A stretch of DNA of 64,000 nt from Styela clava (Eukaryota), in assembly GCF_964204865.1 (NCBI RefSeq), contig NC_135251.1, positions 11,222,001 to 11,286,000 on the forward strand. Reading direction: 5' to 3'. The notes below the pieces were generated by a model, which was given only the letters and a program-made list of their open reading frames with translations, was not told the DNA's origin and did not search any database. Shown here piece by piece: positions 11,519 to 57,399 of this stretch (position 1 is the first letter of the stretch; every line of letters starts with the position of its first letter). The position numbers were made by a program, and so were the translations under genes.

Positions 11519-11660
11519 NNNNNNNNNNNNNNNNNNNNNNNNNNNNNNNNNNNNNNNNNNNNNNNNNNNNNNNNNNNNNNNNNNNNNNNNNNNNNNNNNN
11601 NNNNNNNNNNNNNNNNNNNNNNNNNNNNNNNNNNNNNNNNNNNNNNNNNNNNNNNNNNNN
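11519..11660. other. Assembly gap
   Basis: Run of 142 N. Confidence 1.
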
Positions 11661-31920: not shown

Positions 31921-34900
31921 CTATTTCTTTTTGTCCGTGGATGCTTCTGCTACTTCATTAATATCGATGTCAGAATATGGATGTAATTCAGGGTCCTCAC
32001 TTTCTTCTTCTTTGTCGTTGATGTCGCAATAAAGGTTGGACGTTGTCAGAAAAGAAGAGATGGCTTCGTAGCAGAAATTATATTGTTTCTGAATCAGAAA
32101 GGAAAATAATTGCTCTTCGATGCAAAAATATATATAACAAATAACATAATATTATATTGAAAATCTAATAGCTAAACGAGCCCTCCAGAAGTGTGTCTAC
32201 CAATATGAAGATAACTAATTTTGTCGCCTATTTTACATCAAGTTATGTAAAGGGACTGGAGCCTGTGGGCAAGGGGGGTATATTCACATGGCTAACACAG
32301 ACAGTCTCCGAACTTGTTATAGAACTAAAATGAGTAAAATCGAAATAAAATTATGGCCTAGCCCTAACCTGGTACAAATACTTCGTGAGTATCGATTAGC
32401 AGATGGGGCGTTTGGAAATTGCTTGAAACGACGATAAGTCGTTGGGTGGTTGTAACGCCCGATTACACCAAAACAAACTAATTTTATAATAAACCACACG
32501 TAGCACAAATGGGCATAATTCATGTAGATTCAACAAATTCGTGAGATGTTAAACATTGTGGAATGACTGGTAAAATTAGAAAAAAGTAAATTTTATTATC
32601 CTATTAGAAATCATATTATTTGAATCCTGTACATATATTTACAAAACTTCGTGTCACAGATAAAATAGTAACTTACCAAGGTCTGAACCATGCCGGGTCT
32701 ACAGTCCCTCAAATCTTTCACCGCCCGAAACACGTCAATCTTGTTTTCGTTCTTGACTCTTGCAATAAGGTTGACAATTGCACAGAACACACCAGTACGG
32801 CCGGCCCCATCGCTGTAATAACGATGTAAGGAATATTATCTTTGGTGGTACATCTGTTGTAGAGGTACAGACACACTCTTCTGTAGTTTATTTATCTCAA
32901 TTGGCAACTTACGTTAGAGTATTAGAAAATGTGACCTAACTTTGGAATAAAATTAATATACATTTTTTAAATACTTTTAACTGAATAGCGTCACCGTATG
33001 AAAATATTCCAGAAGTGGCCAATAAAGAGACCAAACACTTCAAGTTATATATATATCTTGCCGTTGCCATTTTTCGCCGATTCTCGTTGTCTGCTATCGG
33101 TGTGGCTTCGATATATCTCGATAGCCAAAGTTCAAATTACCTCAAATAAAACGATTCTGTGCTTGAAATTTGGCAGCATGAAAAGTAATAGACATTTTGG
33201 ATTTTATTATTTCAAAATAAATCTTAGTTGCTGGTTTTTGCAGTTTCTTGTCATCAATGAAAAATGATTTATTTTGGCATTCACATACTAACATTGTTCC
33301 ATATTTGACCTTCTGCGATCTGGCAACTCATTTTACAACTTTAGGAAGTTGCACGCAGAGCACAACCTGCTGTTAGGTTTGTGGGACGATGGTATGAGAT
33401 GTCATCAATCAATTACCTGCAGTGAACCAGCGCTGCACTTGCATCTGATTGTGCAAGATTTTCGTGCATTTTGTTAACAAGTTCAAGAACGGAAGAAATA
33501 TCACATGGTGATTTGTCAGCTTTCCATCCGGTGTACTGATACTGTACAATTTTCTGAAGAATGAATTACGTGAGTTATATTTTGTTTAAATGACACATTA
33601 TTTTGACTAAAGTTATGAAAGCAAAGTGCGATTCTAGTTCAAATATATATGTTTTTTATTTCAAATCAAATAGCCAGTAAATCTGTCAGAATCAGAACTA
33701 TGATATTAGGATAACATTAGATTAATCTGTCAATTTTGAACCGACGTTTTTTCTACTTTGACAAATAACTACGAATATGCGTATTTATATTGGTGTCTTA
33801 TCCTTCATTTGCTGTTCTGGGGTTGACAATTGATAACATACTATCTCAGTACACCAATTAGGTTACAGACTTAACTATGTCCTATATACAGTATCAGCAT
33901 TGTTACTTCACTCTATCTAACTAAAGTCTAAACGGATATTGTTTGCCTGGTCACTCGTCTTAGATTATTATAAAAAGGATACTGACAAATCTGTAAATCC
34001 AGACAGGACCCTGTTTGTTCTTATCAGTGGTTAGTGGCCTAACACTTATGATTAGGGTCATAGGCGTAGCCTTTGGGGCATGCCCCCTCCCAAAAATTTT
34101 CGAGAATTCCATTCTTAAACCACCAGTTTTGTGGCAATCTTGTCTCGTCACGCTTTCTGGTTGTCATTGTTACGTCACAAAGACTTGGCCGTTCGCTCTT
34201 ATTAGCAGTTTGGGAAAGACAAAGACTGTTTCGTTAGCTTTCGGTCAGTCTCTGGTTTGTTCTCACCGGTTTTTAAACGCTTGGATTTTGATGACCAAAT
34301 TACTTCGATGGCTAAATTTAAACAGGCGAAATCGATAGTTTTTTTTCAGCGGAATAAAGAGTCGCTTTCCTCAAAAACGTCAATAAGCGCTACTCAGGCT
34401 GTGGATGCACCGGTTGAGTCAGTTACGTCTATCACTTCTATTCCCGAAGATAAACTAATATTCGAAGAAGGAAAAACAAACGATCTTGGATTTATTCTTA
34501 AGAAACATACGCAGCTTACCGATGCGGAGAGGTACAGGCATCTAACTTCGGATGGTCCGAAAAACGTGACGATTTTGGATACCGTTAGACAAAGTCGTCA
34601 TAAATTTCTCAAAAAATGGCTTGACGATGACAGATTTTGCAGTTGGTTAGTTTACACCCAACTCTGTGATGGGGGTGGTTTGTGTAAGATATGCATCGTC
34701 ATGCAAGAAGCATGGAACTCTCCGGGACACTGCTTTTGTTACGAGACCATGCATTGACTACAAGAGATACAGGGCATCTAACTTCGGATGGTCCGAAAAA
34801 CGTGACGATTTTGGATACCGTTAGACAAAGTCGTCGTAAATTTCTCAAAAAATGGCTTGACGATGACAGATTTTGCAGTTGGTTAGTTTACACCCAACTC

Positions 34901-37900
34901 TGTGATGGGGGCGGTTTGTGTAAGATATGCATCGTCATGCAAGAAGCATGGAACTCTCCGGAACACTGCTTTTGTTACGAGACCATGCATTGACTACAAA
35001 AAATTTATGGAAAAGGCTGTAGCCCACCTAGACACAAATTACCACCGAGAATCAACTATAGCTGCGAAAAACGCAAACAAAAGAAAACAGACGAATATTG
35101 ACTTCCATTGTCAAGACTGTCATGTTCTGTGCTTCGGGTAACATAATAAAAAGTTGTTTATTAAAATGGATTTTGTATTCACAAAAAGCCAGCTGAGTTG
35201 TTGATTCAGATTGCTTATTGATAAACTGTTGTTGTTTCGCGCTTGAAGAAGGGGTGTCTTAAACCCAATATAATTTCTAAAATTTTCAAATTTAGCCCCC
35301 ATCCCAAAATTTTGGGCTGGCTACGCCACTGATTAGGGTATAATGTAGTTTATTAGTATAGGCTAGTGCTAGTACTGATAATGCGCGTGGTGCATAACAA
35401 TTTTTACATACTTTTTCGTAACTGCCGCCTAACTATGTCATTGTTTTGTCACAATGATGTGATTGCTACTGCAAATGAACGTTGCCGAGCTCCGACAATA
35501 ATGACAGCTGTCTGGTCAAAATAAACATCAACTCAAACGCCAGTGGCTCATGGAAGCATACTACCGACCACTGCTATACATTAATGCAATATGATACGAT
35601 ACTAAGTGTTTAGTACCACAATCGTATGGCCTTCTATAGAAAGAATAAAGCGACGATAGGAAATAGTTATGTACCAAAGTAAGGAATAATCTCAAGAAAG
35701 TATACACACAGCCGCTGCTGTACTTTCATGAAATATGACACATTACAGAGTGTATTGCTTATGATGGGGAATACAGGCTTAGTACCACACTCAAACGTAC
35801 CTTCAATAAATTGGATAAAACATGAATCTGAAATAGCATCAACCCAATACAGACTAATTTTGTGCACACACACGGCCAATGCTGAATAAAGGTACCGCAT
35901 GGGGCTTTAATAAATGGAGTAAAATAATAATAAGGGATAGTTACGTATAACAGAAAGACAAATCTCAAGCGAGCAAACGTGTGGCACCATGGCACAAGGC
36001 AGAGTATATTATATATCTAATGATAATTAATAGTACCACACTTACGTTGACTTTCATAAACTGAGTAATGCGACGATAAGAAATAAGAAGGTATTACACA
36101 AATAAGGAATAATCTCAAGCAAACATACGCGCGGCCACCGCTTTACTTACTTGGGGAATAATTATGTGTATACTTCACAAACTAATCACAAGAAAGCATG
36201 AGTGCGGCCATTGATACACTTTAATGAAATGTGATACAACACAGTACCACACGCACATTGACATTCCATAATATGAATAAGGCGACGATAAGGAATAGTG
36301 AGACATTACACAAATACGGATGATCTTCAACAATCATATGGACTTTTAGGGAATATGACAGAACACTGAGTATATACCAAATTGCGGTGTTTAGTACCAC
36401 GCTCGCATAAGTATTCAGTTAATTGAGTGAAACGACGATAAGAATAATTGTGTATATGACGTTTATACAGACTAACTTTAAACAATCATACGGCGGCCAC
36501 GGTTATACTTTTAAGGAATATGACAGAACACTGAGTATAATATACCCATTGGCGGTGTATAGTACCGCACACATATGCGATATCAGTAAATAGAGTAAAA
36601 CGAAGATAGGGATTAGTTAGGTTTTTCTATGGATCCATATAATTTTTTAAGCAAACGTACGGGTATTGCTATACTTTCATGAAATATGACACGACACACA
36701 ATGTATTGCTAATTTTGATGAATAGTATCACATTTATTAGGCCTTCAGTAATCAACGCGAAGTAAATAGCTCAAGGTGATAAGAGGTACCGCGCTCATAT
36801 GTACTTTTTTTAAATTGAGTAAATCGACGATAAGGAATAGTTGTTAATCCGCAACAATCAGTTTAAGCGTAATACTCATTTGTAATCATTTTTTTAAATA
36901 CTGTTTTAGCCCTCCTGGGTGGGGGGCCAGGGTTACTGGCGCAGTACCAAAATAAAAGTACTCAAAGTCAGAAATGAGGCGAAGTATCGTACCATGATCG
37001 TATGGACGCATTGTCGGGTAACGCATTGTCCATACGTGAGAAACTTATGTCGATGGGTGGAAGGTCGCACAGTGGTGTTAAATTGAGTCATGTAATTCAT
37101 ATAATAATTAACCTAAATCAGAATGTTGAGTTTTATCGGTAATTTATTTTGCATATTTTACGTTATGCGATGGCTATCCAGATGTTTAGGATTTTAAATA
37201 ATTTATCAGGCAAGAAACGTCTTGTAAAAGTCAATCTGCTTCCTCTTTTTGAATAGTACTGTTTCGGTTGCTTAAGTCATACAGGAGATATTTTGCATTG
37301 GACTTCAACAAGATGTGTTAATTAAGCTGATATAATACATATTTAGTTAACTAGTATCTCATTTTGGGCATGCCACCGTAGCATTTAAAAAAATCAGGAA
37401 TAATACTTTTTTATCTATGATAATTCAAAATATTCAATAATCGTCAGATTCGTCATGTTCAATACTAATATGTTCATTGGAAATTCCGCTTATGTAAAAC
37501 TGTCTAGCGTTGTTTAATAGCAAAATAGTTGCATAGAGTGATGTTTGGTTTAAAATCAAAGATTGTTGTCATTTTTATGCCTAATGTTTACTTTTTTAAA
37601 AATAAAAATAGATGAGCATAACACAATTTATTTTTTAATACGACACGGCATTTGAAGATAAGAACCTATTTTTAAAACGGATACACACAAATGACTCTGG
37701 ACTAATGTTACGATAATAAATATTAGATATAGCACATATATATTATTTCACGCGGTGTTCAGTGGTCATTTCATTTACTTAGAAAATAGATTTACTATTT
37801 GATTTGTTCTTATGCTATAAATCTTTATTCTTCTGGTTGAATATTTAGGTTTGGCCCATAAATATTAATCCAAAGGTCAAATTTTTTTTTAGATACATCC

Positions 37901-38003
37901 CATTCTTTACTTTAAGATTTAATTTATAATATTATACGACACGATACAAATGTCTAAGGAAGGTAATACGGAAAGTTTTAACGTCCATTCGACAACCATT
38001 GCT

Positions 38004-38043
<40 letters not shown>

Positions 38044-41000
38044 GCTACAACAAAAATAGTATAAAGAAACAATCATTCTATCGATGCGAATTAATGGAGG
38101 TGTTAAATCGGGCAGTAGATTTAGACAATATGTAACTGGCAACTAAAATATTTTCATAACATAGCATTTGGCTAATTACCCGTGAATATGTTTCACGTGA
38201 AATATTCATCTCTCTTTCAATTATGTCGCCTACGAATTCTTGTTTGAGACTGATCGTCATATTCCTTATCGTTATATCATCCTCACTTGATTCGGGCCAG
38301 TACTGTGCGCATTGTTCCTATAATTGAATAATCGCAATAATTTACATGTTACTAGGAAGGTCATTATTGATATATATATACATTTCGTGAGAATATCACG
38401 ACGTGCTGTTAACAGTCCATGATTTCATTCAGCAGTTGTTTAGTTATTTATTTAATCTCTACTGACATTACCCTTTAAATGAGAGTCAAAGTAGTAAAAA
38501 CATTAATAAAATTTATCTTTTTTAGCGAATGTTTTGTTATTGTGTTGAAGTGGTAAATTGACGCAAATGCTTCTCTTCTCGCATTTTATGAAATATTATA
38601 GTAGCAGATAAATCAATAATACCTTTTTATCATTTGTGCACTTCGTCAGCATTATGATAGTATTAATACTATTATCAATAATACATCTCCAAAAATATTC
38701 GATGGATGATTTCATTGGTCCTTGCGTAGCAAACATTCTTGTGGTATCATACGTCTGAAAACAAGTGAAAGCTTATGGATAACAGTATTATTATCGGTTA
38801 ATGTCAAAAATAATTTTAAACTAATTACGATTTAGTTGATTCAGTCCACACAAAAAATTATTATTCTAAAGAGTTCTGCAGGCAAAATGCAAACTATTGA
38901 ACTGTATTCGGTTGGCTAGCTAAATTATTTTATCCATATAATCATATATACCGTTTTCATTTAAACCTACCAACCAATAATCAGACTATGTGTTTAACGA
39001 ACCTCGATTACAGATGCGTTTATATAAGGCACATCAATTTCGTTCACTTGCTTGAGTATGATGACACGATTTCGTTCATCTAATAACATAAAATAAAAAT
39101 AACAATCTTTTATTTTCACTTCAATCTATATTTCATTACACCCAACGTTTAATAAAACAGACATGTCTGCACTTCTCTCTGTAGGTTTGTGGTATAGAAA
39201 AATAACGATTGTATGAAACTTCAGGTAAATTTGATGAGACGACGTCTTGGTACCTTTCTTGGGACCCAGAGCCTAGTATCGGCAAAATGAATTTGTTGAC
39301 TTTAATAACATTGCCATGACTGGTCTTCAGTTTGCGGTATTTTGAGAACTCTCGTTTTTCGTGTTTTCTTATTAAAACACAACTGATTATGTCAAAACAT
39401 GTTGAATTTTGGTAAATAAAAGTTTGCATCAAATTGTGAACAAAATTTGACAATGATTAGTCGTTGCATTAACTTCAGATTTTGGAGAAGACTTTGACCA
39501 CTTTAACTATATATATAGCTGGCACTCACATGGCACAATCTCTTTGCATCTGTTCATCGCACGATTCCTAGACGTGTCGCCATGTTTGGTCTGATTTATT
39601 GGGCCGACCAACGAGAGGTTTTTGAACTCTTTCTCCAACCTTTCAACGATTTCTGGTTTACTAAGTAGGAAATGGCATGATTTAATCAGCTGCTTTATGC
39701 CTAGGTACGGTCCTAATTTTTTTTATTCGAAATACGAAATAGTAAACAAAATTAATTTTTGTTTATCTGGTACACATAAGTGGATTTTGAGAAAAATTCA
39801 AAGAGCGAGGTTTCAGAATTTACAATATACACCGCATAAACCTTTAAATTAATATAATCGTTTTTAAAAAATAGAATGTACAACATGAAAGATCGAGGCA
39901 TAATTTTAACTCTCACTTTTCCATAACCTTTGACACGGAATCTTGATCAATATCTGTTTCTTTCATCAAATACCATTCCAAAAGTAGTTTGTGAACGAGA
40001 ATGTACTGATCCTGGTTAACAAAGGGCACAATAATGAAAATGCATTTTGTTACTGATAATAGCATTACTTGCAACTAGTTTTGCTCAGATTTGTATTGAA
40101 TTACGTATCCTGAATGTGGAAATTTGATACGATATGAAAAAGGGTTAATTTTAATTTTGCACAAATTGAAATGATATTTTTGTGAAAAGATCTAATTTGA
40201 TTGCACGAATATTAAACGGCTCAAAACTTACACAGGTCTGAACAAACTGCACGCGATATTCCCGCATTTTTAGAACGCATGCGTAGACATCAATGGAGTT
40301 CTTTGCTTCGGCTTCTTCCAGTGTATAGTCATATGCGATAAACGCGCCTGTACGTCCAGCCCCAGCACTTTTTCATAAAATAATAATTCAAATTTTTTAA
40401 AAATGACGTTAAAAAAGGTAGTTACAAACGGAAACACTATCAAGACTATTCATTTTGCGTATATTATCAGATACAGTATAAATATCGAATAAAATCATCC
40501 CTTTAGCACCCACATTTCAATCCAATATTTATGCACCAACCTGCAGTGACAAATAATAGGCGAGTTTTTGTTGGTTTTAGCGTGCTGCGACATCACTGAG
40601 TTATAAAATTTGATCAAATTTGTTGTTGTTACCGGTACTCCGTGATCAGGCCACCGGATGAAATGATATTGATAGACGGGTTTTTCCTCCTGCAGAGAAC
40701 ATTTTAATATATTGTTCGTTAACCCAAATTTAGATATTTTTTTCAGTATTTTTATCTACGAGCTAAGGTCAATCAATAAATATTTAATATGGGTAACTTA
40801 TGCCCTTTCGATTCGAAATGCAATCGAACATACATTACTTTCCGTAGTGAGAGCGAATGTACGAACTACGAAACTTCCATAAGTTGCTTCGTTTTTGTTT
40901 TCCAGTTTGACATCACCGTACATCCTTGTTACTCCTTGATCGGGCCAGTATTTTTCACATTTTGCCTAAAAAGATGAAATCTGGTTTAACCTTTTGGTAT

Positions 41001-47000: not shown

Positions 47001-50000
47001 CGTAACTGATTTACTGGATAAGGAAGGGTCGCATCCGTTCGCACAGTTCTAGTTGTCACTAAAGGGTGGGTACATATATCTGGACAGACGGTGATCTGAA
47101 ATATATTTGATAAATCGTAAACCCGAAATAATCAGATACCGGAAACTGTAAATGGCGGGCGCATTTTACCTAACCTGAATTATATTTAATCAAAATACGT
47201 GATTGTTTTATATTTCATTGAATATTCACCTAAAGATATGCGTAGTTGTTAGTTGCAATGAAAATGTATGTGCTGTAAGCTTACACTGGCTGATGGTAAT
47301 CATTTGCAGTAGTCGGTGAATTTCATCGTTTTGGATAACGCCCATTCAGCTTAAATTGATGGTTGCGATGACATATTTTGTAATTGGAATATTGGATCAA
47401 CTATTTTGTCTTGTGAGGTAGGATTCGGGTATAATTGTTAGAATATATTCTGGGGTATGATGAACATTACATAGTATAAAAGTATTTTCAATAATAAGTA
47501 TTTTTTAATAATGATAAAGTTTTTTCAATAAATAATATTTAAATTATTGAAGTTTATACTGATTTACCTTCACTTGATATACTGTAGAATGTTCTAGATT
47601 TGATAGTCGTCTGTAAATATTATCTGAATTTGTTGGTATTAAAATTTCCGGACCAACCGCCTTTATCCTGTCTGCATCATCTTTTATCAGCTCCAAGCTA
47701 TAATGTTATGAATAGAATGTATGTTATCATGCGTGGTTTTGGTATCGATGCACTGAAAATAGGTTACATTTTCAACTGTTTATTCTGATACTAGTCCTAC
47801 AGATTTTTCATATGGTAGGCTATTCAATGTTGTACTACATAGTATTATCATTGTTTAGATGTTGATGTTGTACATCACCTAATCTGATCTGTCATAATCA
47901 CTGGCCAAAAATAAATTGAACAGAGTCACCGAATAAAGTATTTTATTTTTAGCCGTACGTGTGCTTGATCCCCACAGCTTCTATTGCTGGACGCCATGAC
48001 ACTGTTATGTTTGCACTGCATTGCTCCACAATAGTTGTCATCTGTGTAGGTTTTCCAATTACTGATTACGAGAACATATAAAATATGACTTTAATTTTTA
48101 ATATAAAACAGCCGACCAAATATCACGTATCTTACCGCCTCGTTGGCAAACGAATCCGTTAGATTCCGAGCAATTTGTTGCATACCATTTCCAGCTGGGA
48201 TGCCTCATTGTTACGCAGTTAGTATTCTGTTTGTTTGATTGACCTTCGGCCCAGGCCTCAAAGTTGTCATTAGAGTTATTTGAATTGGTGTCCCAGCTTA
48301 ACATAAAGTTAAAAGTAAACAATCCAAAAATGGAACGAAATAGTTAGCTATACCGTGAAAATTAAATACCTCTCATTGCGACCTTCGTTGAACATAATCT
48401 CCCCATCTATCCATCTCCAAACTCCATCATTTCTGCTCCGGTTCGCCCCGATAAATACTGAACACATGAGAATATTATTCAAATATTTAGCTTATAAATT
48501 TAAATATAAAAATTTAATATCGGGTATACTCCATAGGTGACAACATTTTCAGTAGTATATTGTCGTTGCATCTTTGGAGATTTATGCACAGGTGATAACT
48601 GTAACGTTTTTTACTAAACGTATAACGACAATTCTCTAAAAAGAACCAATTCTCAAATATGACAACGCTGAGATGATCTGTATTTATTTAAGTGGTTAAT
48701 GTGAACATTAAAGATATTTGATCTATTAACATCTCCACGAGACTTGGATTAGATCTAAAGTTTTACGAATTTGAAAAAGTGTATATTTTCGACTCACGGC
48801 TCACTGGAGTTTTTCTGTAGTCTGCTAATGATTCTATTTGTAATTGGGTTTCGTTATTATTGATTTTTGCCAGACTTCCTCCTTTATATGAGCAATGATA
48901 TTTTGCTGTTGTATAATTTGCCCTCGCACTCATGTTGCCAATCACAATGTATGTTGAATTTGATCCCACAGCAAGGTCTTTAATAATATTCAACAGTGAG
49001 GAAGTGATTATGCGAAGGGAATTCATGCATGGCATTTTTACCTCACAATATCACGAAGTATGTTTGTCCTAATATCGTATTGCATAATACTAATCAATCT
49101 TCAAGAGATTGATGCAGTACTTAATCCCAACAAGTAAGATACTATTGAACTTATTGTAGCACAAGCTTTCAAATGGTCGTAACAAACAGTGAGCTCCAAA
49201 TCTTGTCGAATTTGAGTAATTTAATATGTGCAAAGTAATATTACCAACGTTTTGGGTACATGTTCGTTTATAACATTAGTACCAACCCGTAAATTCATTT
49301 TCTTTGTAATTTAGCCATATTATATATCGTTCCTGCTGCCCCAATATTTAAAACATAATTATGACGTAGTTTTCTTATTTCAAATAAGATGAAAAACTTA
49401 CTACGATTTAAAATCATTGTTGCTGTCGACGTGTTTTCAAACGAATTGCTGGCATAGCAGGAAATGTTTGTCATCCCCAAATATTCAAAGAGTGCGATGT
49501 CTAATTTGCTTGTATTTATTGCAACATCTTGCGTCGAATTTGTTGAAGAAGTTTTAAAAATTGATCCGACTTCTTGCTTAATCGCTAGATTTGTTCCGTT
49601 TTTAGAAAACATCCAGTGAATTTTAGGAATTGGATATCCCTCAAATGCACACATAGCTGTTGCAAAGTTGTTGTTTTCACTTATATTATTACCTTTCAAT
49701 AGAATTTCGGCTGAAAATATAAAGATACAAAGATTAGTTAAAAGAATATAAAATTTTCGTGTTTTGATATTTTCACGAAGCCCGAAAGTCTAGTTTTTAT
49801 TAAATGCATCAAATTTGTAGTATTTTTTCTTGATATCAACCTCACACATGCTTCAAAGCTATGACATATTCAGGCTTGCAATAATATGCAGATGTTGAAA
49901 ACTAAGAAATATTCGAGTCATATCTGTTAAAATATTCGATTAAAATTCGAATAAAATCAACCATACAATGTAAATAATTTTAAACAGTGCAAATAATTTT

Positions 50001-53000
50001 ATAAATCAGGTTCGTCATTTAAAATAAAAACAGCATCAATTGCCTTCGGCAGAAATGCTTACCTCTCAGAATAGAAGTATTTTCATATATTTCCATACGA
50101 CCACCAACAACATTTCTTGCCACGCATGCATACACTCCTGCATCTTTTCGCAAGGCGTTTTTCAGGTGGAGTATGGCCATAGTTGACGTGTTTGATTGGA
50201 ACACAGTTTGACTAACTTCAGAAGAAACTTCTTTATTGCCTTTATACCATTTGATTTGGGGTCGAGGAACTCCCGTTGCTTCACACGTTATATTTTGCAT
50301 CGAGTTTGGAATTATCTCAGAGGATGAGCTCATATATTTAATTCGTGCAGGCGCTGCAAATTTGTGAATACTCGGTTCAAAAGGACTATTTTGTTATAAT
50401 GGACTGTCAGTAGTTTAACAAAATCGACTTTGTATGTACCCCCCAAAAAAACGTGATTGTATAACATAATTTAACACACATTAAATAACATTGTATTCAT
50501 CATAAAATATAATCATAATAGTAAAACACAAAACACCACATAAACATTTGACGAATTATATATAAATGTATATATTACCTTCGACGACGACAGTAATATT
50601 TTCCTCTCTGAAGTAACTTTCAGGATCAATTTCTGGTCTTGCGCGGAATGTGTAAATTGTTTGAAAACTTTGACTTGAAAACGGACCAAATGTGATAGAA
50701 ACATTTTTTGAAACATTACGTTTTGTTTGGAAAGAATATGAAAAATTCAAATTTTCGAAGCATTCAATTTTGATTAGTCCGTGATTGCTGCCAACATTGA
50801 GCGTTACTGTAATTCTTCTGTTTATTTCGGTAACATATTTGCGCGAAGTTGTCGTGATATTAATTCTATCTGTAAATTTAATACGAAGTATGGTTGAAAA
50901 CGAAATGAATAATATTTAGAAATTTATTTTTCCTAGCAGTTTGCTTTTCCCCGATTTCATTTCCGAATAGTTTGCCAGAAGCTGACTGTATGAAAATAGA
51001 GGTACATAGTGACATGCGACATATTTATAATGGCGTCATCTGCTGGAATAACCTAGCTTACGTATTTATAAATTAATGCCCAGGATGAAACTATGTTAAA
51101 GCAAAGGTTGTTATCGCTCCATAGTAAACATTGCTTTTAAACGTACCATTGTCACAATGTTCCCCATCATATCCGGCGTTACATATGCATTTTCTATGAC
51201 ACCCCTTAGAAATACACATTCCTCCATTTTGGCATTCAGGGTCCGATTTACATGGATCATTCACTGTAAAAATTGAAAATATCGAAGCCTGTTTTCTTAT
51301 CATGGCTGGTAAAAACTGTTCATTTCAGTAGTTGGTAATAAAGTAAATATTACCGAATATTTTGTGTCACGCGCAGTTCAATTTATATTTTCTCGAAGTT
51401 CCCTTATAAATATCACGGGTACTCTAAACCGAATGTTTACTCGGCCTCTGCTGAGAAAATAGTACATATTTTAGCGTAATTGGTTGTTTTAGATAATTGC
51501 ATGAAACGCAAATACATTCAACAAACCCATCCAAATGTTGATATTTGATATGGTATACCGATCACCACAAGCCCACAACAACAATTTTTGAATTGCGAAT
51601 AATTCAACAAATAAATACCACGGACCCGTATTGGTGGATATACTTTTTCGATAAAAAATTATTTGATAAATTTGCAATATTAATTTCAAATGATTAGAAG
51701 TATATTTTGTGATCATATACCTGCAACTTCACATACATAGCCAATATTGCTTGTTTTTGTCTTATCGAACCAGTGCAACTTGTCCCACGTACGACTCAAA
51801 TTCCCATTTATACTCTTCCAGGAGCTAAGAGCTAAAGCAATATTGCTTCCAGGCCTCCCGGTAGCCCAATTAGAGTCAGTACCCGAATTGATACTTGACC
51901 CATCAAACCAAATCCATTTTTGCTCGTTTTTATGACCGCCTATCCACAGCTCAATGAGACCAACGTTGTTATACAATGCTTGTACTTGATTTTTAACGAA
52001 ATTCTGAATTTCCTGCACTTTTAGTATTGCAAGTATTCCTTCTAATTTCCCGCAACTCTCATTTGCAGTCAGAAAATTCATTTTGTGATTGTAATTGATG
52101 TGATATTTGCAAGATCTATTTTCAAAGAACACCTCATCTGCAAAATATTTCGAAATATATCTCTTAAAGATTTGATCTATTTTAAAGTTGTGATAATAAT
52201 GTTTCGCTGCTTCATAGAATAGTGCCTTGGGATTTTTATAAGATAACGTAGCTGTATGGCTATATTTTAACAATAGTATCATTTACCTTTTTAATCTATT
52301 TCTTGAGCATCTGTGAAATGATATACATCTATATATGTTTCATTGAATTTGATATAATGCTAGTAGTAGGTTCATGAAATGAAAGCAAAGCTTTATGGAA
52401 ATGAAAGCAAACTTAGACTGACTATGTACAATAAATACCATACTTTCACATCGGGATCCGTTGTACGGAGGCAGGCACGTACAGTTGAAGAATGGAAAAT
52501 GCGTTGTTTGCATACACTGACCATTGTTTTTGCACGGCTTCGGCGTACACTGATCTAAAATTTAAATGTAATTTAGAATTATTCTAGCTCAACCCTACTT
52601 ATTGTAGTGGTACCACTGAGCTGATAACAAACAAATATTATTGGATTTTGAAATATTATCTTATTACGTTTTTTTATTACGTGATGTACTTTACCTGTTA
52701 TTTGAATTTTAGCAACAGCGTGTGTTACATGCTCATTGACAATATTAGTAGCTACGCATGCGTATTCTCCAATACTTGTTTTATCTTGTTTCACGACGTG
52801 TAATGTTGCATGATCAGAATGGTTAGTCTGATAAATGCCAGGTGTTGTCATGTTGCTGACCGTAACATTTCCTCCATACCAATTTATAACTGGCTTTGGA
52901 TAGCCCATAGCAAAGCATTTCACAGTGTTGTTTCCCGGCTTGGTGGGTATCGCCAACGTTGGAGGTTCAATGCGAACTATCGATGCATACGCTACAGATA

Positions 53001-56000
53001 AAAAAAAATGAGAAAATAATTGGCATTGATGAGAACATCGCCGTTTTTTGTTTTTGCTATTTTCATATTATGAAGACTATCATGAATTAGATTTTGTACA
53101 TTTTCACAGTATCGTTTTTTTATCAACGTCGTTTCTTTCATTTCTATTAGTTATTAAGCAATGTAATTGTTTATGAAATAGGTCAGGGGTGGGCAACCCC
53201 TGGCACGCGTGCCAAACTTGGCACGCGAGCCCATTTATTCGGCACGCGAGCGAGGCCTAGGAAACGAGATCATTCTCTTTTAGATAAAAAGTTTTAAGAC
53301 TATCAATTATCTGATGAAAATAGGCGTTCCTTTGTTCGTTATCGATTGTTAACAATCCGGTATTTATTTGGACTCTTTTTGTCCTTTCATGACATATGGC
53401 TACAAAGCATAAATTATGACGTAACAAATGAGTGAGCTCTCTCGAAATTTTGTCGAGAAAAGCTCAGCATTCATTTGGCTACACTCTTACGTAATATAGA
53501 TCGTCTGTGCCACCCTTTTTCGTCATTTCTGCTTGATTTAAAAGTTGAACAGCCCACGTTGGTTATAGTAACTTGCTAACTTACTGTTATAAATTGATTT
53601 CGAAAAAAATATAAGCGATTGGAATGCCATTCCCGAAAATTTTCCGTGTCTTAAAAACTTTGCAACTGCATTACTCTACAATTCTACATATTTTTATGTA
53701 CATATGCTTGAGAATCTATGTTCTCAGCTATGAATTTCATTGAAACCAGTACCGGTAGTCCGTGTATTTATTTGAAAGTTAGAAAATATAAACCCAATAT
53801 AAAATATCTATCAGCGTTAATGCAGCAGCAAAGGTCTGAATGATATAGAATAAAAAAAAGTAATCAAGTCTATTTGTCGGACTGATATTTTCCTGAATAG
53901 TGAATCTGTCAGTACATGTTTAAAAGGTTTATTATTGTGTATGTTTGCTTTGAAAGTAGCAAAGGTATGTGTTTAATTTTGGTCGGCACGCGGAAGAATT
54001 TTGTCGTTAAATTTATCCACTTTTGGCAGGCGAGCCGAAAAGGTTGCCCACCCCTGAAATAGGTTATAATCTAAGAACGGAACTACACCATCATACAAAC
54101 CTTTGACAGTGACCGATATATTGGTTCTGAAATAATATTCTTCTTCATTCACACTCTCAGCTCGGAAATAATATACTATGCCAGTGCCCATAATGCCCGA
54201 TGTGTTTATAGCGAAATACAATGTTTCAATTATATTTCCGCTTGTTATAGTAGATGTTGAATTTGTTTTTAAAACTTCACCGCCAGTATTTTTCATAGTT
54301 ATTTTTGCATTGCCATCGTAAGACGTTAGATTCAAAATCACTGTAATAATGCTTCCTTGCAATGTCTCGGAAGTTCTATCCTGCGGTGTTACCGTCATCA
54401 ATTCTGAAAATTGTGATAAAATATTTATTAGTAATTGCTTTTAATAGTCACAAGAGAAATAAGTTATAAAAAGCAGTAGGTATGTTTACGACAAATTAGG
54501 GTTTCAAGGTAGTAACTTTATACGTTGTTACCTAAAAAACAATACCCACAAAATTTCTCAACTAGTTCTAAAAAATGAATTAAATAATTTAAAATATTTT
54601 CACACTTGAACTTCTGTTCATGTTTGATTGTATCCAAAAGTTTCAGGAGTCTATAGCACATTTTTCACAAAAGTTATATCCTCCCTAGAGCAGTGGTTCT
54701 CAAACGCCGGGGCGCGCCCAATTATGGCAGACAATTTTTGAGGGGTCGTGAAGCTAATCAAACATAAAAATATTTGTTAGATTTTAATATTTAAATTTTT
54801 TTATTGTTTATAAATTTCTTTATTATTATGTCCAACGCATTTTTTTGAATAATTATATTTTCACCTTTCATATGTTATTGGTAACTTATTGTTAGCTAGG
54901 TATTTTTGAGGTTGAGCGCAAGACTTGTCAAATTTTAAATAGATGGCGTGGCTTAATAAGTTTGAGAACCACTGCCATAGACTGTGCAGATGGCCTCGTT
55001 TAGAAAAATTTGCATACTGTATAATCTAATTATTTGGGGATTGCAAACCAAGTTATATACGCATAAGTATATATTCTCATTTTCGTGGAGGTAAAAAATT
55101 CTAAGTTTGTAGTATCGAATTTGCGAAGAAGACAACCTTTCAATTACCTTCGAATCTCGGCGCTGTATACATTGGGCAATATTCAGAATTTTTTTGCTAG
55201 TATTGGTGTATAGCGGAAATCGCCTATATCTATTTTCGAAGAACGCAACTCGTCGTTGTCATCTATCACGATAAAAGTTCATTTTAAGTGTCTGTCAGAC
55301 ACCGTTGTACCGATTGTATTTTCTGAAAGTAGCGCCTGACTATAGGTATTTTTAGAATAAAACTATGCAAAGAACGACGACTTTTGAATAGTCCAGTACT
55401 TTATATTACCAATAAATTAAAACTTGCTCACTTGAATGTTTGGTAAGATAATATTGAAGGTTATGAATGTAGAGGTACAACATGCTATGTGCAATACGTG
55501 TAACTAATTGTTGGATATAAACGAATCACTTTTCATATAAAACCTTATCATGATAATAATTCCCAATTATTTCATCACGAGAAGCACATTCAAAAGAGGC
55601 AATCTTGCACAATTTACCCATTACGTGTTATAGTGAATGAATCAACGAGAAATAGAGTATATTTACCACTCTCACACTTTGTTCCAAAATATCCTGGCTT
55701 GCAATTGCAACTGTATCTGTCTTTCTCGGTTGCTATAATGCAGTTCCCATGATTGGAGCAGATTTCGTTAGTGCATGTTTTATTAATGAAGGTCATATCT
55801 AAATAGTCCAATATCACTATTAAATTGCGTGAATAACACAATATTTATAATATTGGATGAGTTGAATTAAAATTCTAAAGCATTTTTAAAAATTAACACC
55901 GTTCTTCTTTGTTCTAATTTTTGTGAGTAGCTTTATTTTGGTTGGTACTTCTGTCCTTCAGACTGCCAATTAAGTTATTTATAAGTGTCGCATCATATAG

Positions 56001-57399
56001 TGTATTTGATATACGTCAAATATTTGAAACTTTTAGCCCAGACTTGATTTAGAAATGGAAATTGAACTTTAATATTACAAAATACAATTCAACCTGACTG
56101 GCAAACGTATTTATATCCAGGTTCGCAATCGTGATTGCGCCACAATCCTGTTGAAGCAAACTGACGAACACACTGGTTTTTGTTGATTTTTTTGTATTGT
56201 ATTGGACTTGTACTATCCCTGCAAAAGTTGTGAATTGTAGAGATTTATTTGAAATGAAATGTTATTACCCATAAGATACAAAGAATCCCGTAGTAAGGTT
56301 CAAATGGGCATAATCAATAGAAAATCCCCAGTCATGTTCATCAGTCTGAAGTAATTGCTCAATTAACTTAATGTATAACGATTTCTGCACAATTTTATAT
56401 TAATGAAGCTCAGTGACGCAAATGATGCAATATGGTTAGCCGACGTTAATCATAATATAGTTATTTTTTGGTACTTCTGAAGTATGCGCACCAAGATGTC
56501 GCACAACCTGAACCCTAACCTGGTACATAACCTGAGTTCAGGTTGTGTGCCATCTTGGTGCGCATTTTTCAGGAGGTCCTATTTTTCTTTCTGTGGTGGA
56601 TAAGCAAGTCGTGCTAACATTGATAGATAAACATTCGGTCGAAGTTATTGCCTGTTAGTTTCTGTGAAATATCACCGTAAACGATAAGGGAAACATCGAT
56701 GGTGGTAATTAATTGGACTTTGCTCACCACATAGTAAATGCGCGACTTCAATATATTTTTTCCTTCACTTGAGCTATTAAGCGATTGCTAACACACTTGC
56801 GATATATGTGATATCAATAAATACTTATTCGTACCATTTGGAAAATCTCAATTCACCCTCTTCATTCCAAAGCCATTTATTATTCGGTAGATAGTTCAAT
56901 CCAATCCAGATATTCTCTCTGAAAAATTGTGAAATTTCTTTCAAAATACATATTTAATAGTAAATATGCCCAATGTAATTATACCTGCTGTTGTGTGAAG
57001 ATTGATCTTAAAATTGTTCATCGGAAATTTACGAAATTGCTTATTCTCGGAAATATTCTCTATATTAAATACCTGGTGAGATTTCTTACGGCTTCGTATG
57101 TTTCACGATCCTTAATTTCAACCAGCCAGCTGTGTCTATCGGTACAAACTTTTTTGGCTGCATACCATTTCTTCCCTTGATCAAATAGTTCAAGTTTGTA
57201 TGTTCGGAAAGTAGCTGTTTCTGAGAATATTTCAGGACCGGTTGGTTAGTTTTTATTTTCCACATCACATACAAATAGTCAATTTTATCTTTTTATAATA
57301 AAACAACAATATATTTATAAACTCACGTTTTGGACTTTCTGATTGAATAGCTGAAAATAATGAACTTATCAGGATAAATATCCATATTGCGTTCTTCAT
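31921..57399 (-). CDS. Receptor-type protein tyrosine phosphatase with C-type lectin/EGF/Ig/FN3 ectodomain and tandem PTP domains (41 exons, about 2096 aa)
   Basis: Hand-spliced GT-AG exons, all phase-compatible, in transcript order: 57399-57327 (signal MKNAIWIFILISSLFSAIQS), 57220-57073, 56918-56835, 56218-56094 (CTLD1), 55798-55667 (EGF), 54403-54101 (divergent Ig-like), 52991-52695 (Ig), 52554-52444 (EGF), 52137-51721 (CTLD2), 51263-51147 (EGF), 50869-50579 (divergent Ig-like), 50353-50063 (Ig), 49710-49402 (Ig), 48977-48798, 48457-48370, 48296-48136 (CTLD3), 48061-47959, 47697-47568, 47095-46922, 46774-46564, 46451-46355, 45740-45594, 45352-45173, 44989-44883 (FN3 repeats and stalk with RVKR), 44555-44471 (TM), 43525-43461, 43307-43174, 42859-42763, 42171-42104, 41754-41620, 40965-40834, 40689-40541, 40367-40232, 40011-39917 (D1), 39660-39530, 39079-39003, 38754-38623, 38317-38180, 33553-33417, 32812-32677, 32088-31921 (D2 and stop). 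Sum is 6291 nt with no internal stop. Confidence 0.92.
34059..35331 (+). mobile_element. Internally deleted hAT element (Tip100/ZMYM1-like) with a transposase N-terminal zinc-finger remnant and an internal tandem duplication
   Basis: TIRs CATAGGCGTAGCC/GGCTACGCCACTG and perfect 8-bp TSD ATTAGGGT. Frameshifted ORFs read KFLKKW..WLVY..GLCKIC..AFVTRPCIDYKK..AHLDTNYH, typical of a TTF-type zinc finger. About 236 bp is duplicated in tandem (about 34532-34762 and 34768-34999). Confidence 0.85.
35590..36845. repeat. Degenerate tandem repeat (about 150-170 bp unit, roughly 8 units) in the long D2 intron
   Basis: Recurring ordered motifs AGTACCAC / CGACGATA(A/G)G.A.TA / AATCTCAAG / GCGGCCAC / TACTTT..AATATGACA at about 35612, 35781, 35891, 36032, 36244, 36393, 36561, 36723 and 36784. 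Confidence 0.75.
38009..38038. repeat. (TA)n microsatellite
   Basis: About 15 TA units. Confidence 0.9.
39917..42859 (-). other. PTP domain D1 of the receptor phosphatase, predicted catalytically active
   Basis: All classical motifs are present across exons: KNRYKNILP, DTSRVIL, YINASYI, FIASQGP, DFWRMV, IVMLT, KCEKYWP, WPDHGVP, ICHCSAGAGRTG, FVQTCDQY. Confidence 0.93.
42323..42525 (+). mobile_element. 203-bp MITE, family A
   Basis: Near-identical to 1372-1574; perfect 9-bp TSD GAGTCAGTT. Confidence 0.92.
43666..43844. mobile_element. Short hAT MITE
   Basis: TIRs CAGT(A/G)GTGGGATTCA, perfect 8-bp TSD GTTGTATG, internal GAACCGG repeats; 179 bp. Confidence 0.9.
44471..44555 (-). other. Transmembrane exon of the receptor phosphatase
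   Basis: GNSYVAAIVVAIIAVICLAAIVGILF followed by basic KKKR across the next junction; tag acceptor and gtatgt donor. Confidence 0.9.
46009..46244. mobile_element. MITE family B (GG..CC ends, 8-bp TSD, GGTTAGGGTTAGG subterminal motif; Merlin-like by termini)
   Basis: Long imperfect TIRs GGTGCTCCCGAAGTATGCGAACCAAGATGGCGGAC and perfect TSD TAAATAAC. A sister copy at 24790-25025 has TSD AAAAAAGA. Confidence 0.88.
53184..54056 (+). mobile_element. Non-autonomous hAT (Charlie/Buster-like) element with a decayed C-terminal dimerisation-domain remnant
   Basis: TIRs CAGGGGTGGGCAACC, perfect 8-bp TSD AAATAGGT, GGCACGCG subterminal repeats. A degenerate WNAIPENFPCLKNFA..ESMFSAMNF remnant lies near 53620-53745. 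Confidence 0.9.
54691..54974. mobile_element. Older hAT-Charlie MITE
   Basis: TIRs CAGTGGTTCTCAAAC; degenerate TSD CCCTAGAG/CCATAGAC. A related decayed copy lies near 18682-18956. Confidence 0.8.
56470..56579. mobile_element. About 110-bp fold-back MITE related to family B
   Basis: Palindromic arms around AACCCTAACCTGGTACA; TSD TATTTTTT/TATTTTTC. Confidence 0.8.

What the first reader, a model, noticed from the sequence alone, without database searches (positions are those of the whole stretch)
31921..57399. Receptor tyrosine phosphatase with three C-type lectin domains interleaved with EGF and Ig modules
Seen: one phase-consistent ORF of about 2096 aa links signal-CTLD-EGF-Ig-like-Ig-EGF-CTLD-EGF-Ig-like-Ig-Ig-CTLD-FN3s-TM-D1-D2. 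Established: the vertebrate RPTP subtypes R1-R8 use FN3, Ig, MAM, carbonic-anhydrase-like or glycosylated stalk ectodomains, and none has C-type lectin plus EGF arrays. Inference: this is a lineage-specific recognition or adhesion receptor coupling a lectin-fold sensor directly to tyrosine dephosphorylation, possibly in innate immunity or allorecognition. I consider it the best candidate for an undescribed system here.
Basis: partly seen in the sequence, partly recalled or inferred. Interest (0 to 1): 0.85.

Follow-up and report, generated by a model that had tools for sequence, protein, structure and literature searches.

The report
Sea-squirt lectin-headed receptor tyrosine phosphatase
This is a real, intact 41-exon gene of the sea squirt Styela clava, already in RefSeq as an unnamed protein, that joins three lectin-fold domains, EGF and antibody-like modules to a double tyrosine phosphatase; it belongs to a large sea-squirt-only gene family of untested function.

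Summary
On the minus strand, 41 GT-AG exons (57399 to 31921) give a 6291-nt CDS of 2096 aa with no internal stop. The order is signal, CTLD, EGF, X, Ig, EGF, CTLD, EGF, X, Ig, Ig, CTLD, two FN3-like domains, stalk, TM, PTP D1, D2.

My exon chain translates to a protein identical to RefSeq XP_077966184.1, "uncharacterized protein LOC120335592 [Styela clava]". The gene is therefore already publicly annotated as one gene, but unnamed.

D1 keeps every catalytic motif. D2 has the usual weakened form. None of the three lectin-fold domains has the EPN/QPD and WND sugar and calcium motifs, so "lectin sensor" is not supported as sugar binding.

The architecture is not unique. Styela has over a dozen lectin-bearing RPTPs, and Ciona and Phallusia have them too. 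About nine further PTP loci lie within 0.6 Mb, next to phosphatase-less relatives with tyrosine-motif tails.

The N-terminal CTLD is 81% identical to that of a phosphatase-less neighbour, while all other modules are 30-50% identical to any retrieved paralogue.

I found no paper describing the family. An immune or allorecognition role is untested, and no RNA evidence could be obtained. This scan had already noted the family on other DNA of this genome.

The parts
57327..57399 (-). Exon 1: start codon and signal peptide (aa 1-24)
   Evidence: ATG at 57399; an in-frame stop lies 10 codons upstream; hydrophobic N-terminus; same start as RefSeq P0144.
56094..57220 (-). CTLD1, three exons (57220-57073, 56918-56835, 56218-56094), aa 25-143
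   Evidence: Weak Lectin_C on the first exon. One of the 3 Lectin_C stretches in P0144. The C-terminal half aligns to DEC-205 CTLDs. 81% identical to the N-terminus of the phosphatase-less P0017.
55667..55798 (-). EGF1, aa 144-187
   Evidence: PF00008, 27.4 bits. 86% identical to the EGF of P0013.
54101..54403 (-). X1: family-specific beta-sandwich module, aa 188-288, phase-1 exon
   Evidence: No Pfam match. Three hits among 1.84 billion representatives, of which only Styela P0001 is a family member. AF2 model has seven strands at pLDDT 64.7; Foldseek finds generic Ig-like sandwiches.
52695..52991 (-). Ig1, aa 289-387
   Evidence: Ig_3 31.3 bits, I-set 30.8 bits.
52444..52554 (-). EGF2, aa 388-424
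   Evidence: PF00008, 24.9 bits.
51721..52137 (-). CTLD2, single exon, aa 425-563
   Evidence: Lectin_C positions 2-106 of 107, 32.8 bits. In the alignment to DC-SIGNR, RPG stands in place of EPN.
51147..51263 (-). EGF3, aa 564-602
   Evidence: PF00008, 26 bits.
50579..50869 (-). X2: second copy of the family-specific module, aa 603-699
   Evidence: No Pfam match. Aligns with X1 and with the genomic paralogues.
50063..50353 (-). Ig2, aa 700-796
   Evidence: Ig_3 55.7 bits, I-set 52.5 bits.
49402..49710 (-). Ig3 (probable), aa 797-899
   Evidence: Only sub-threshold Ig matches. Colinear with the second Ig of Styela paralogues.
48136..48977 (-). CTLD3, three exons (48977-48798, 48457-48370, 48296-48136), aa 900-1042
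   Evidence: Lectin_C C-terminal half 38.6 bits, N-terminal part 16 bits. Best Lectin_C stretch of P0144 is 919-1041.
46564..48061 (-). Two FN3-like domains, four exons (48061-47959, 47697-47568, 47095-46922, 46774-46564), aa 1043-1248
   Evidence: The exons alone match no Pfam family. fn3 scores 24 bits in P0027 and 31.6/29.8 bits in paralogues. Atlas neighbours are RPTP FN3 arrays, scores 0.94 and 0.93.
44883..46451 (-). Membrane-proximal stalk, four exons (46451-46355, 45740-45594, 45352-45173, 44989-44883), aa 1249-1425
   Evidence: No Pfam match. Conserved at 32-36% identity in Styela paralogues both with and without PTP domains.
44471..44555 (-). Transmembrane exon (TM about aa 1430-1452)
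   Evidence: The only strongly hydrophobic 19-mer window after the signal peptide.
43174..43525 (-). Juxtamembrane region, two exons (43525-43461, 43307-43174)
   Evidence: Placed by homology to P0027; identical to P0144.
39917..42859 (-). PTP domain D1, seven exons, about aa 1521-1790
   Evidence: Y_phosphatase matches on the exons. NRY, WPD, HCSAGAGRT and QTCDQY are all present.
32677..39660 (-). PTP domain D2, six exons, including a 4.6-kb intron (38179-33554)
   Evidence: Y_phosphatase matches on the exons. HCSDGAGRT is kept, but NRC replaces NRY and WKAD replaces WPD.
31921..32088 (-). Last exon: acidic C-terminal tail and stop codon
   Evidence: Stop at 31923-31921. First AATAAA lies 226 nt downstream.

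Best explanation
The region is one intact gene of Styela clava, RefSeq LOC120335592. It encodes a 2096-aa type-I membrane receptor protein tyrosine phosphatase.

Shown:
- The ectodomain was built by duplicating a four-module cassette (CTLD-EGF-X-Ig). It continues with a further Ig, a third CTLD, two FN3-like domains and a stalk, and carries 43 N-glycosylation sequons.
- The cytoplasmic part is a tandem D1-D2 of the R4/R2A kind. D1 has all catalytic motifs. D2 has the catalytic Cys and Arg but lacks the KNRY tyrosine and the WPD aspartate.
- The gene is one member of an ascidian-specific, tandemly expanded family. It lies beside phosphatase-less relatives with the same kinds of heads.

Inferred:
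- The membrane-distal CTLD/EGF head binds a protein or other non-canonical ligand rather than sugar through calcium.
- Engagement, clustering or exclusion of the large glycosylated ectodomain controls where D1 dephosphorylates membrane-proximal phosphotyrosines. D2 acts as a regulatory or docking domain, as in LAR, RPTP-alpha and CD45.
- The tissue, the ligand and any immune role are unknown.
For: - Gene structure: 41 GT-AG exons and 2096 aa, identical to XP_077966184.1.
- Whole-protein Pfam: 3 Lectin_C, 3 EGF, 2 Ig and 2 Y_phosphatase stretches.
- Colinearity: the Styela paralogues P0025 and P0026 are colinear with the window from 57218 to 32653.
- Motifs: D1 and D2 motifs, a single TM and 43 N-glycosylation sequons.
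- Cassette duplication: aa 37-373 align to aa 440-782 at 27.7% identity over 358 columns, E 2.5e-26.
- Cytoplasmic part against PDB: PTPRA 428 bits, PTPRE 389, PTPRS/F 364-371, CD45 342, PTPRZ/G about 295.
- Family: many Styela, Ciona and Phallusia proteins carry both PF00059 and PF00102.
- Tree: all 26 ascidian rows form one clade with 99% SH-aLRT support. The window gene groups with P0026, P0025 and P0022 at 94%.
- Genomic cluster.
- No EPN, QPD or WND motif.
Against: - No transcript evidence could be obtained here. 'One transcript' therefore rests on an identical RefSeq model whose supporting evidence I could not inspect, plus colinear paralogues.
- Enzyme activity, ligand and expression are all untested.
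- Loss of the EPN/WND motifs does not exclude non-canonical glycan binding.
- The tree lacks vertebrate R1, R2B, R4 and R5 sequences. The R4-like placement rests on PDB bit scores only.
Confidence: 0.75

Rival explanations
1. Built-in inhibitory arm of a paired-receptor family. The phosphatase form and the phosphatase-less, tyrosine-motif-tail forms share near-identical ligand-binding heads. The PTP form would directly erase the phosphotyrosine signals that the tail forms generate. This would be a functional analogue of ITIM/SHP-1 inhibitory receptors, but with the phosphatase covalently attached.
For: - Head similarity: signal plus CTLD1 is 81% identical over 143 aa to P0017. P0017 is a 564-aa receptor with a TM and a Tyr-motif tail, encoded about 357 kb away on the same chromosome. 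EGF1 is 86% identical to that of the phosphatase-less P0013. Every other module is only 30-50% identical to any retrieved paralogue.
- CTLD1-type first exons: copies at 79-90% identity head both PTP-bearing loci (C2:11.33, 11.40 Mb) and loci without nearby PTP hits (11.498, 11.643 Mb).
- Styela P0011 has the same ectodomain order ending in a Tyr-rich tail.
- Two assembly versions of this gene differ at 78 of 1168 ectodomain residues against 5 of 643 cytoplasmic residues.
Against: - There is no expression, ligand or substrate evidence.
- Head sharing can come from recent duplication or gene conversion without any functional pairing.
- The tail motifs are not canonical ITAMs.
- The excess of ectodomain differences may simply reflect lower constraint.
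Confidence: 0.22
2. A developmental or neural adhesion-type RPTP, working like LAR or RPTP-mu in cell-cell contact and axon or tissue patterning, and unrelated to immunity.
For: - Ig and FN3 modules with a tandem PTP are the LAR/R2 design.
- Automatic names for the paralogues are mu-like, delta-like and F-like.
- LAR-type proteins are the nearest non-chordate and vertebrate hits, at 34-37% identity.
Against: - The family is tandemly expanded, fast-diverging and ascidian-restricted. That is unlike conserved single-copy developmental RPTPs.
- A separate LAR clade exists in the tree.
- The heads are CTLD/EGF, not Ig.
Confidence: 0.15
3. A true calcium-dependent carbohydrate-binding (selectin-like CTLD-EGF) receptor that senses glycans and switches the phosphatase.
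For: - Three Pfam Lectin_C domains.
- CTLD immediately followed by EGF is the head arrangement of selectins (established knowledge).
Against: - No EPN, QPD, WND or close variant occurs anywhere in the 2096 aa.
- CTLD2 has RPG aligned to the EPN of DC-SIGNR, and lacks both cysteines of the inner disulfide.
- CTLD1 and CTLD3 best match CTLDs of DEC-205 and the IgY receptor.
Confidence: 0.07
4. A gene-model artefact: two adjacent genes (a lectin/Ig receptor and a PTP) wrongly chained, or a decaying paralogue.
For: - No RNA evidence was obtainable here.
- An older RefSeq model (P0027, 1842 aa) began inside X1 and lacked the first 257 aa.
- Phosphatase-less genes with the same ectodomain do exist.
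Against: - All 40 junctions are GT-AG and in phase, with no stop in 6291 nt.
- There is a single TM, followed in phase by juxtamembrane and D1 exons.
- No tail exon of the phosphatase-less type matches the window. P0011 matches stop at 46565.
- The current RefSeq model is identical.
- Four Styela paralogues and Ciona and Phallusia proteins have the same fused layout.
- All D1 motifs are intact.
Confidence: 0.03

Closest known systems
Vertebrate R4 receptor PTPs (PTPRA, PTPRE)
   Same: Best-scoring solved relatives of the cytoplasmic part: 428 and 389 bits over D1-D2. They share the tandem D1-D2 with an active-type D1.
   Different: R4 ectodomains are very short glycosylated stubs (established knowledge). 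Here the ectodomain is about 1400 aa of CTLD, EGF, Ig and FN3 modules. Orthology was not tested, because no R4 sequence was available for the tree.
R2A receptor PTPs (LAR/PTPRF, PTPRS, PTPRD)
   Same: Ig plus FN3 modules, one TM and a tandem PTP. They score 364-371 bits in PDB and are 34-37% identical to the Styela paralogue P0022.
   Different: LAR-type proteins form a separate, fully supported clade. They have no CTLD or EGF and are conserved low-copy genes.
Other ascidian lectin-RPTPs in public databases (Styela P0022, P0025, P0026; Ciona LOC100183702 and LOC144746766; Phallusia A0A6F9DQN0)
   Same: Same domain vocabulary and the same cytoplasmic clade. P0025 and P0026 are colinear with the whole gene.
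   Different: Identity to this gene is only 35-56%. The numbers of CTLD/EGF/Ig modules vary. All are automatic, uncharacterised models.
Phosphatase-less Styela receptors (P0011, P0017 and relatives)
   Same: Same ectodomain modules and stalk, in the same chromosomal cluster. The head of P0017 is 81% identical to CTLD1 here.
   Different: They end in a short tail with several tyrosine motifs instead of D1-D2.
Sea urchin PTPRLec (Byrum et al. 2006, Dev Biol 300:194)
   Same: As I recall it, a lineage-specific RPTP with a C-type lectin ectodomain, proposed to act in immune defence. The citation exists.
   Different: Its content could not be read here, and no sequence was compared. No echinoderm protein appeared among the best 120 cytoplasmic-domain hits, so independent domain shuffling seems likely.
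Selectins and mannose-receptor-family CTLDs
   Same: The CTLD-EGF head order is as in selectins. The C-terminal halves of CTLD1 and CTLD3 align best to CTLDs of DEC-205 and the IgY receptor.
   Different: Selectin CTLDs keep EPN/WND and bind sugar through calcium (established knowledge). These CTLDs do not keep those motifs.

Membership tests
Classical receptor-type protein tyrosine phosphatase (tandem D1-D2) | Signal peptide and a single transmembrane helix between the ectodomain and the PTP domains | tested here: met
   Hydrophobic N-terminus. There is one strong hydrophobic window, aa 1430-1452, and none elsewhere.
Classical receptor-type protein tyrosine phosphatase (tandem D1-D2) | D1 with the KNRY, WPD, HCX5R(S/T) and Q-loop motifs | tested here: met
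   NRY, WPD, HCSAGAGRT and QTCDQY are present. Y_phosphatase scores 473.8 bits with 2 stretches.
Classical receptor-type protein tyrosine phosphatase (tandem D1-D2) | A second, membrane-distal PTP domain | tested here: met
   The D2 exons match PF00102. HCSDGAGRT is kept, with NRC and WKAD variants.
Classical receptor-type protein tyrosine phosphatase (tandem D1-D2) | Phosphotyrosine phosphatase activity | not testable with these tools
   Needs recombinant D1 and a pNPP or phosphopeptide assay.
Vertebrate RPTP subtypes R1-R8 | Ectodomain composition of one of the subtypes (Ig+FN3 only; MAM+Ig+FN3; carbonic-anhydrase-like+FN3; FN3 only; short stub) | tested here: not met
   Pfam finds Lectin_C x3 and EGF x3 beside Ig. 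No MAM or carbonic-anhydrase domain was found.
Calcium-dependent carbohydrate-binding C-type lectins | CTLD fold recognised by sequence profile | tested here: met
   PF00059 scores 107.8 bits with 3 stretches.
Calcium-dependent carbohydrate-binding C-type lectins | EPN or QPD triplet plus the WND motif of calcium site 2 | tested here: not met
   None of EPN, QPD, WND, EPS, EPD or QPN occurs in the protein. RPG aligns to the EPN of DC-SIGNR.
Calcium-dependent carbohydrate-binding C-type lectins | Measured glycan binding | not testable with these tools
   Needs a glycan array with and without EDTA.
Paired activating/inhibitory receptor families (KIR, Ly49, SIRP-like logic) | Closely similar ectodomain heads on receptors with different signalling ends | tested here: met
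   CTLD1 is 81% identical to that of P0017, which has a TM and a Tyr-motif tail. EGF1 is 86% identical to that of P0013. All other modules are 30-50% identical to any retrieved paralogue.
Paired activating/inhibitory receptor families (KIR, Ly49, SIRP-like logic) | Tandem gene cluster | tested here: met
   PTP-bearing and PTP-less loci lie on C2 at 10.87-11.71 Mb.
Paired activating/inhibitory receptor families (KIR, Ly49, SIRP-like logic) | Co-expression in immune cells and opposing signalling | not tested
No expression data were reachable.
Paired activating/inhibitory receptor families (KIR, Ly49, SIRP-like logic) | Elevated ectodomain polymorphism | tested here: inconclusive
   The two RefSeq versions differ at 78 of 1168 ectodomain residues against 5 of 643 cytoplasmic residues (Fisher p 2e-10). 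There are only two sequences and no dN/dS.

The most novel reading that the evidence does not exclude
Ascidians run a paired-receptor system in which the inhibitory partner is not an ITIM receptor that recruits a cytosolic phosphatase. Instead it is a receptor with the tyrosine phosphatase built in. Recently exchanged CTLD/EGF heads would give a PTP form and a tyrosine-tail form the same ligand specificity, and the balance between them would set the response, possibly in haemocyte self/non-self or microbe recognition.
Probability: 0.2. Interest if true: 0.75.

Novelty: new variant of a known kind. Interest (0 to 1): 0.42.

Why it matters
Receptor tyrosine phosphatases are classified by their ectodomains, and ligands are known for few of them.

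A chordate lineage has multiplied an R4/LAR-like phosphatase on lectin-fold, EGF and Ig heads, and keeps phosphatase-less twins with near-identical heads next door. That offers a natural experiment on two questions:
- how ectodomain recognition is coupled to phosphotyrosine removal;
- whether inhibitory signalling can be hard-wired rather than recruited.

It also shows that gene names transferred automatically ('mu-like', 'delta-like', 'alpha') hide a distinct ascidian family.

For this single gene, however, the sequence is already public and its function is entirely untested.

Tried and rejected
- **RNA evidence.** The one-transcript question therefore could not be tested with reads.
- **Joined model.** The joined spliced model was not handed to any search tool. 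Searches were made exon by exon by reference. Whole-protein searches used the public ids P0027 and P0144. Exons were joined only inside local scripts, to get the CDS length and compare it with public proteins.
- **Rfam.** No family matched on the window.
- **X1 module search.** Against 1.84 billion representatives there were three hits. Only Styela P0001 was a family member. The two bacterial or metagenome hits are unrelated beta-sandwich repeats.
- **Short-exon PDB search.** A single 45-aa D1 exon did not discriminate between RPTP subtypes.
- **Literature.** Nine searches found no paper on lectin-bearing RPTPs in ascidians. The Botryllus allorecognition paper PMC12582321 concerns unrelated Ig receptors. 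The Styela endostyle atlas mentions only PTPRQ. Byrum 2006 is not held.
- **Alternative exon.** I looked for a tail-type alternative terminal exon in the window. No match to the tail of P0011 was found.
- **Canonical lectin reading.** Rejected on the motifs.
- **Species.** I first took the genome for a different ascidian, because the older model P0027 is only 95.5% identical. That was wrong: the current RefSeq protein is identical.

Full report
**What is in the sequence**

The window has about 34% G+C and eukaryotic exon-intron structure. I listed the stop-free segments of the minus strand between 57426 and 31924 and scanned them one by one against Pfam.
- EGF matched above threshold at three sites.
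- Lectin_C matched a complete single-exon domain at 51716-52282 and a C-terminal half at 48101-48343. Weaker N-terminal halves lie at 57063-57245 and 48766-49050.
- Ig_3/I-set matched at 52582-53067 and 50022-50393, and weakly at 49298-49789.
- Y_phosphatase fragments fall into two consecutive domains.

Enumerating splice sites gave in-phase GT-AG junctions throughout. Introns between ectodomain modules are mostly phase 1.

**The gene model and its public counterpart**

The family-specific module X1 (window:54102-54401:-) was searched against 1.84 billion representative proteins. It found only one relative, a Styela clava protein.

Walking from that protein through two word-indexed searches reached three kinds of Styela protein:
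- phosphatase-less receptors, such as P0011;
- receptor PTPs with the same ectodomain, such as P0022, P0025 and P0026;
- P0027, 'uncharacterized protein LOC120335592'.

tblastn of these proteins against the window showed that P0025 and P0026 are colinear with it from 57218 to 32653. P0027 matches it at 65-100% per aligned segment. The best matches of P0027 anywhere in the window's genome all lie in this gene.

Using these proteins to choose among in-phase splice pairs gave 41 exons, a 6291-nt CDS and a 2096-aa protein with no internal stop. The 90% cluster of P0027 holds a second member, XP_077966184.1 (P0144), which is 2096 aa long and lies on a 31.3-Mb contig. My translation is identical to it at every residue.

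The window is therefore Styela clava.

The older model P0027 started at an internal methionine inside X1 and lacked the first 257 residues.

I did not pass the joined model to any search tool. Joining was done only in local scripts, and whole-protein searches used the public ids.

**Domain anatomy**

Whole-protein Pfam on P0144 gives 3 Lectin_C, 3 EGF, 2 Ig and 2 Y_phosphatase stretches. In residues, the order is:

| Residues | Module |
|---|---|
| 1-24 | signal peptide |
| 25-143 | CTLD1 |
| 144-187 | EGF1 |
| 188-288 | X1 |
| 289-387 | Ig1 |
| 388-424 | EGF2 |
| 425-563 | CTLD2 |
| 564-602 | EGF3 |
| 603-699 | X2 |
| 700-796 | Ig2 |
| 797-899 | Ig3 (probable) |
| 900-1042 | CTLD3 |
| 1043-1248 | two FN3-like domains |
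| 1249-1425 | stalk |
| about 1430-1452 | TM |
| after the TM | juxtamembrane region, D1, D2 and an acidic tail |

Residues 37-373 align to residues 440-782 at 27.7% identity over 358 columns (E 2.5e-26). The CTLD-EGF-X-Ig cassette was therefore duplicated internally, as another note of this scan proposed.

X1 and X2 match no Pfam family. An AF2 model built from eight genomic copies is of modest confidence (pLDDT 64.7). It shows seven strands, and Foldseek returns generic Ig-like sandwiches (carbohydrate-binding modules, CARDB, complement MG domains) with query-normalised TM-scores of 0.6-0.74. 'Ig-like fold' is reasonable, but X is not an Ig-superfamily member by sequence.

FN3 is marginal by Pfam. 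It is supported by the paralogues and by language-model neighbours that are RPTP FN3 arrays.

**Catalytic and binding motifs**

D1 has NRY, WPD, HCSAGAGRT and QTCDQY, the complete set for an active classical PTP.

D2 keeps HCSDGAGRT and QTLKQY. It has NRC in place of NRY and WKAD in place of WPD. These are the two positions whose change explains the weak activity of LAR D2 (established knowledge). D2 is therefore most likely regulatory.

None of EPN, QPD, WND or near variants occurs anywhere in the protein.
- In the HMMER alignment to DC-SIGNR, CTLD2 has RPG where the lectin has EPN. CTLD2 also lacks both cysteines of the inner disulfide.
- The C-terminal halves of CTLD1 and CTLD3 align best to CTLDs of DEC-205 and of the IgY/PLA2 receptor.

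These are lectin folds, but probably not calcium-dependent sugar binders.

The ectodomain carries 43 N-glycosylation sequons.

**Relatives and evolution**

A search with the cytoplasmic region of P0022 listed Lectin_C plus Y_phosphatase proteins from three ascidian genera:
- thirteen Styela proteins among the 120 best hits;
- two Ciona intestinalis loci, LOC100183702 with 3 Lectin_C stretches and LOC144746766 with 3 EGF and 2 Lectin_C stretches;
- one Phallusia mammillata protein.

Outside tunicates the nearest proteins are LAR-type RPTPs (34-37% identity) and amphioxus RPTPs that carry fibrinogen-C domains.

Against solved structures, the cytoplasmic part scores best with PTPRA (428 bits) and PTPRE (389), then PTPRS/F (364-371), CD45 (342) and PTPRZ/G (about 295).

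I built a quick maximum-likelihood tree of 36 D1-D2 regions.
- All 26 ascidian sequences fall in one clade (99% SH-aLRT), apart from the LAR clade and the amphioxus clade.
- The window gene sits in a Styela-only clade of 15 sequences (96%), next to P0026, P0025 and P0022 (94%).

Two caveats apply. Only SH-aLRT support from a quick search is available, and several branches are long. No vertebrate R1, R2B, R4 or R5 sequence was available, so orthology to R4 is not established.

**Genomic context**

The window is C2:11222001-11286000 of a 377-Mb assembly. Profile and protein searches of that genome show the following.
- There are at least 152 PTP exon matches genome-wide.
- About nine further PTP-bearing loci lie on C2 between 10.87 and 11.45 Mb.
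- At least five of these lie on the same strand just beyond the window. They carry a CTLD1-type first exon 7-28 kb upstream of their PTP exons.
- Further along (11.49-11.71 Mb) lie loci with the same heads and X modules but no PTP hits. Instead they have exons like the tyrosine-rich tail of P0017.

**A mosaic head**

I compared each module with all retrieved paralogues.
- The signal peptide plus CTLD1 is 81% identical over 143 aa to the N-terminus of P0017.
- EGF1 is 86% identical to that of the phosphatase-less P0013.
- Every other module is only 30-50% identical to anything retrieved.

P0017 is a 564-aa CTLD-X-EGF-CTLD-EGF-TM receptor with a tyrosine-motif tail, encoded at C2:11.636-11.643 Mb.

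The closest genomic copy of the first CTLD1 exon (90%) lies at 11.498 Mb on the opposite strand, in a locus without PTP hits.

This pattern fits recent exchange or duplication of the membrane-distal head between PTP-bearing and tail-bearing genes. It is the basis of the paired-receptor reading, which stays a hypothesis.

The two RefSeq versions of this gene differ at 78 of 1168 ectodomain residues but at only 5 of 643 cytoplasmic residues. The differences are patchy: Ig2 and Ig3 are 99-100% identical, CTLD2 is 90% and EGF3 is 82%. With two sequences and no DNA for the older one, this cannot separate diversifying selection, gene conversion and relaxed constraint.

**Literature**

Nine full-text searches found no description of lectin-bearing RPTPs in ascidians.
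- A 2025 Botryllus paper describes Ig-type allorecognition receptors with ITIM/hemITAM co-receptors. It mentions only CD45-like RPTPs in passing.
- From memory, Byrum et al. 2006 named sea-urchin RPTPs with lectin and scavenger-receptor ectodomains and suggested immune roles. The reference exists, but the paper is not held. That precedent is unverified here.

**Earlier notes of this scan**

Earlier notes had already reported, on other DNA of this genome, clusters of 'phosphatase-less twins' and two other lectin-tipped RPTPs. I reached the phosphatase-less relatives independently before reading those notes. I confirmed the species assignment myself.

**Verdict**

It overstates two things.
- The lectin-fold domains lack the sugar-binding signature.
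- The architecture is already present in public databases for several ascidians, although uncharacterised.

The most likely mechanism is that of other tandem-domain RPTPs. Ligand- or size-driven positioning of a large glycosylated ectodomain would control access of an active D1 to membrane-proximal phosphotyrosines, with D2 as regulator.

The more novel possibility is a paired-receptor system with a built-in phosphatase arm. The mosaic head and the mixed cluster suggest it, but it is untested.

Noticed in passing
window 33554-38179 (intron inside D2); tandem copy at 34528-34999: This intron is 4.6 kb, while the gene's other introns range from 73 to about 1260 nt. It holds a 236-bp unit repeated twice at 97% identity. 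The 34-36 kb stretch is richer in G+C (0.40 against about 0.33). It is probably a transposon-derived insertion.
   Followed up: partly
G000:C2:11286674-11315283, just beyond the window's right end: The next gene on the same strand is a paralogue with the same layout. Its PTP exons lie at 11286674-11292335, a CTLD2-like exon at 11301875, an X module at 11305080 and a CTLD1-type exon at 11315140.
   Followed up: partly
G000:C8:15223717-15224415, C1:7564771-7565478, C3:11270852-11271553: Three loci match the whole Y_phosphatase profile (positions 1-234) in a single uninterrupted open frame of 445-910 aa. They are intronless PTP genes in a genome whose other PTP genes are split into many exons. 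They may be retrogenes or non-receptor PTPs.
   Followed up: no
Public proteins P0041 and P0046 (Ciona intestinalis): A Ciona protein auto-named 'receptor-type tyrosine-protein phosphatase alpha isoform X2' has almost the same cytoplasmic region as LOC100183702. The newer model of LOC100183702 carries three Lectin_C stretches. The 'alpha' name therefore hides a lectin-bearing ectodomain.
   Followed up: partly
Public proteins P0053-P0056 (Branchiostoma): Amphioxus RPTPs close to this clade carry fibrinogen-C domains (PF00147) on their ectodomains. This is a second case of a lectin-like recognition fold fused to a tandem PTP in an invertebrate chordate.
   Followed up: no
Older RefSeq model P0027 compared with window aa 258-2096: The two public versions of this gene differ by 83 residues, of which 78 are in the ectodomain. 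The differences are concentrated in X1, CTLD2, EGF3, X2 and Ig1, while Ig2 and Ig3 are 99-100% identical.
   Followed up: partly
window 11519-11660: A run of 142 N lies outside the gene. It was left untouched.
   Followed up: no
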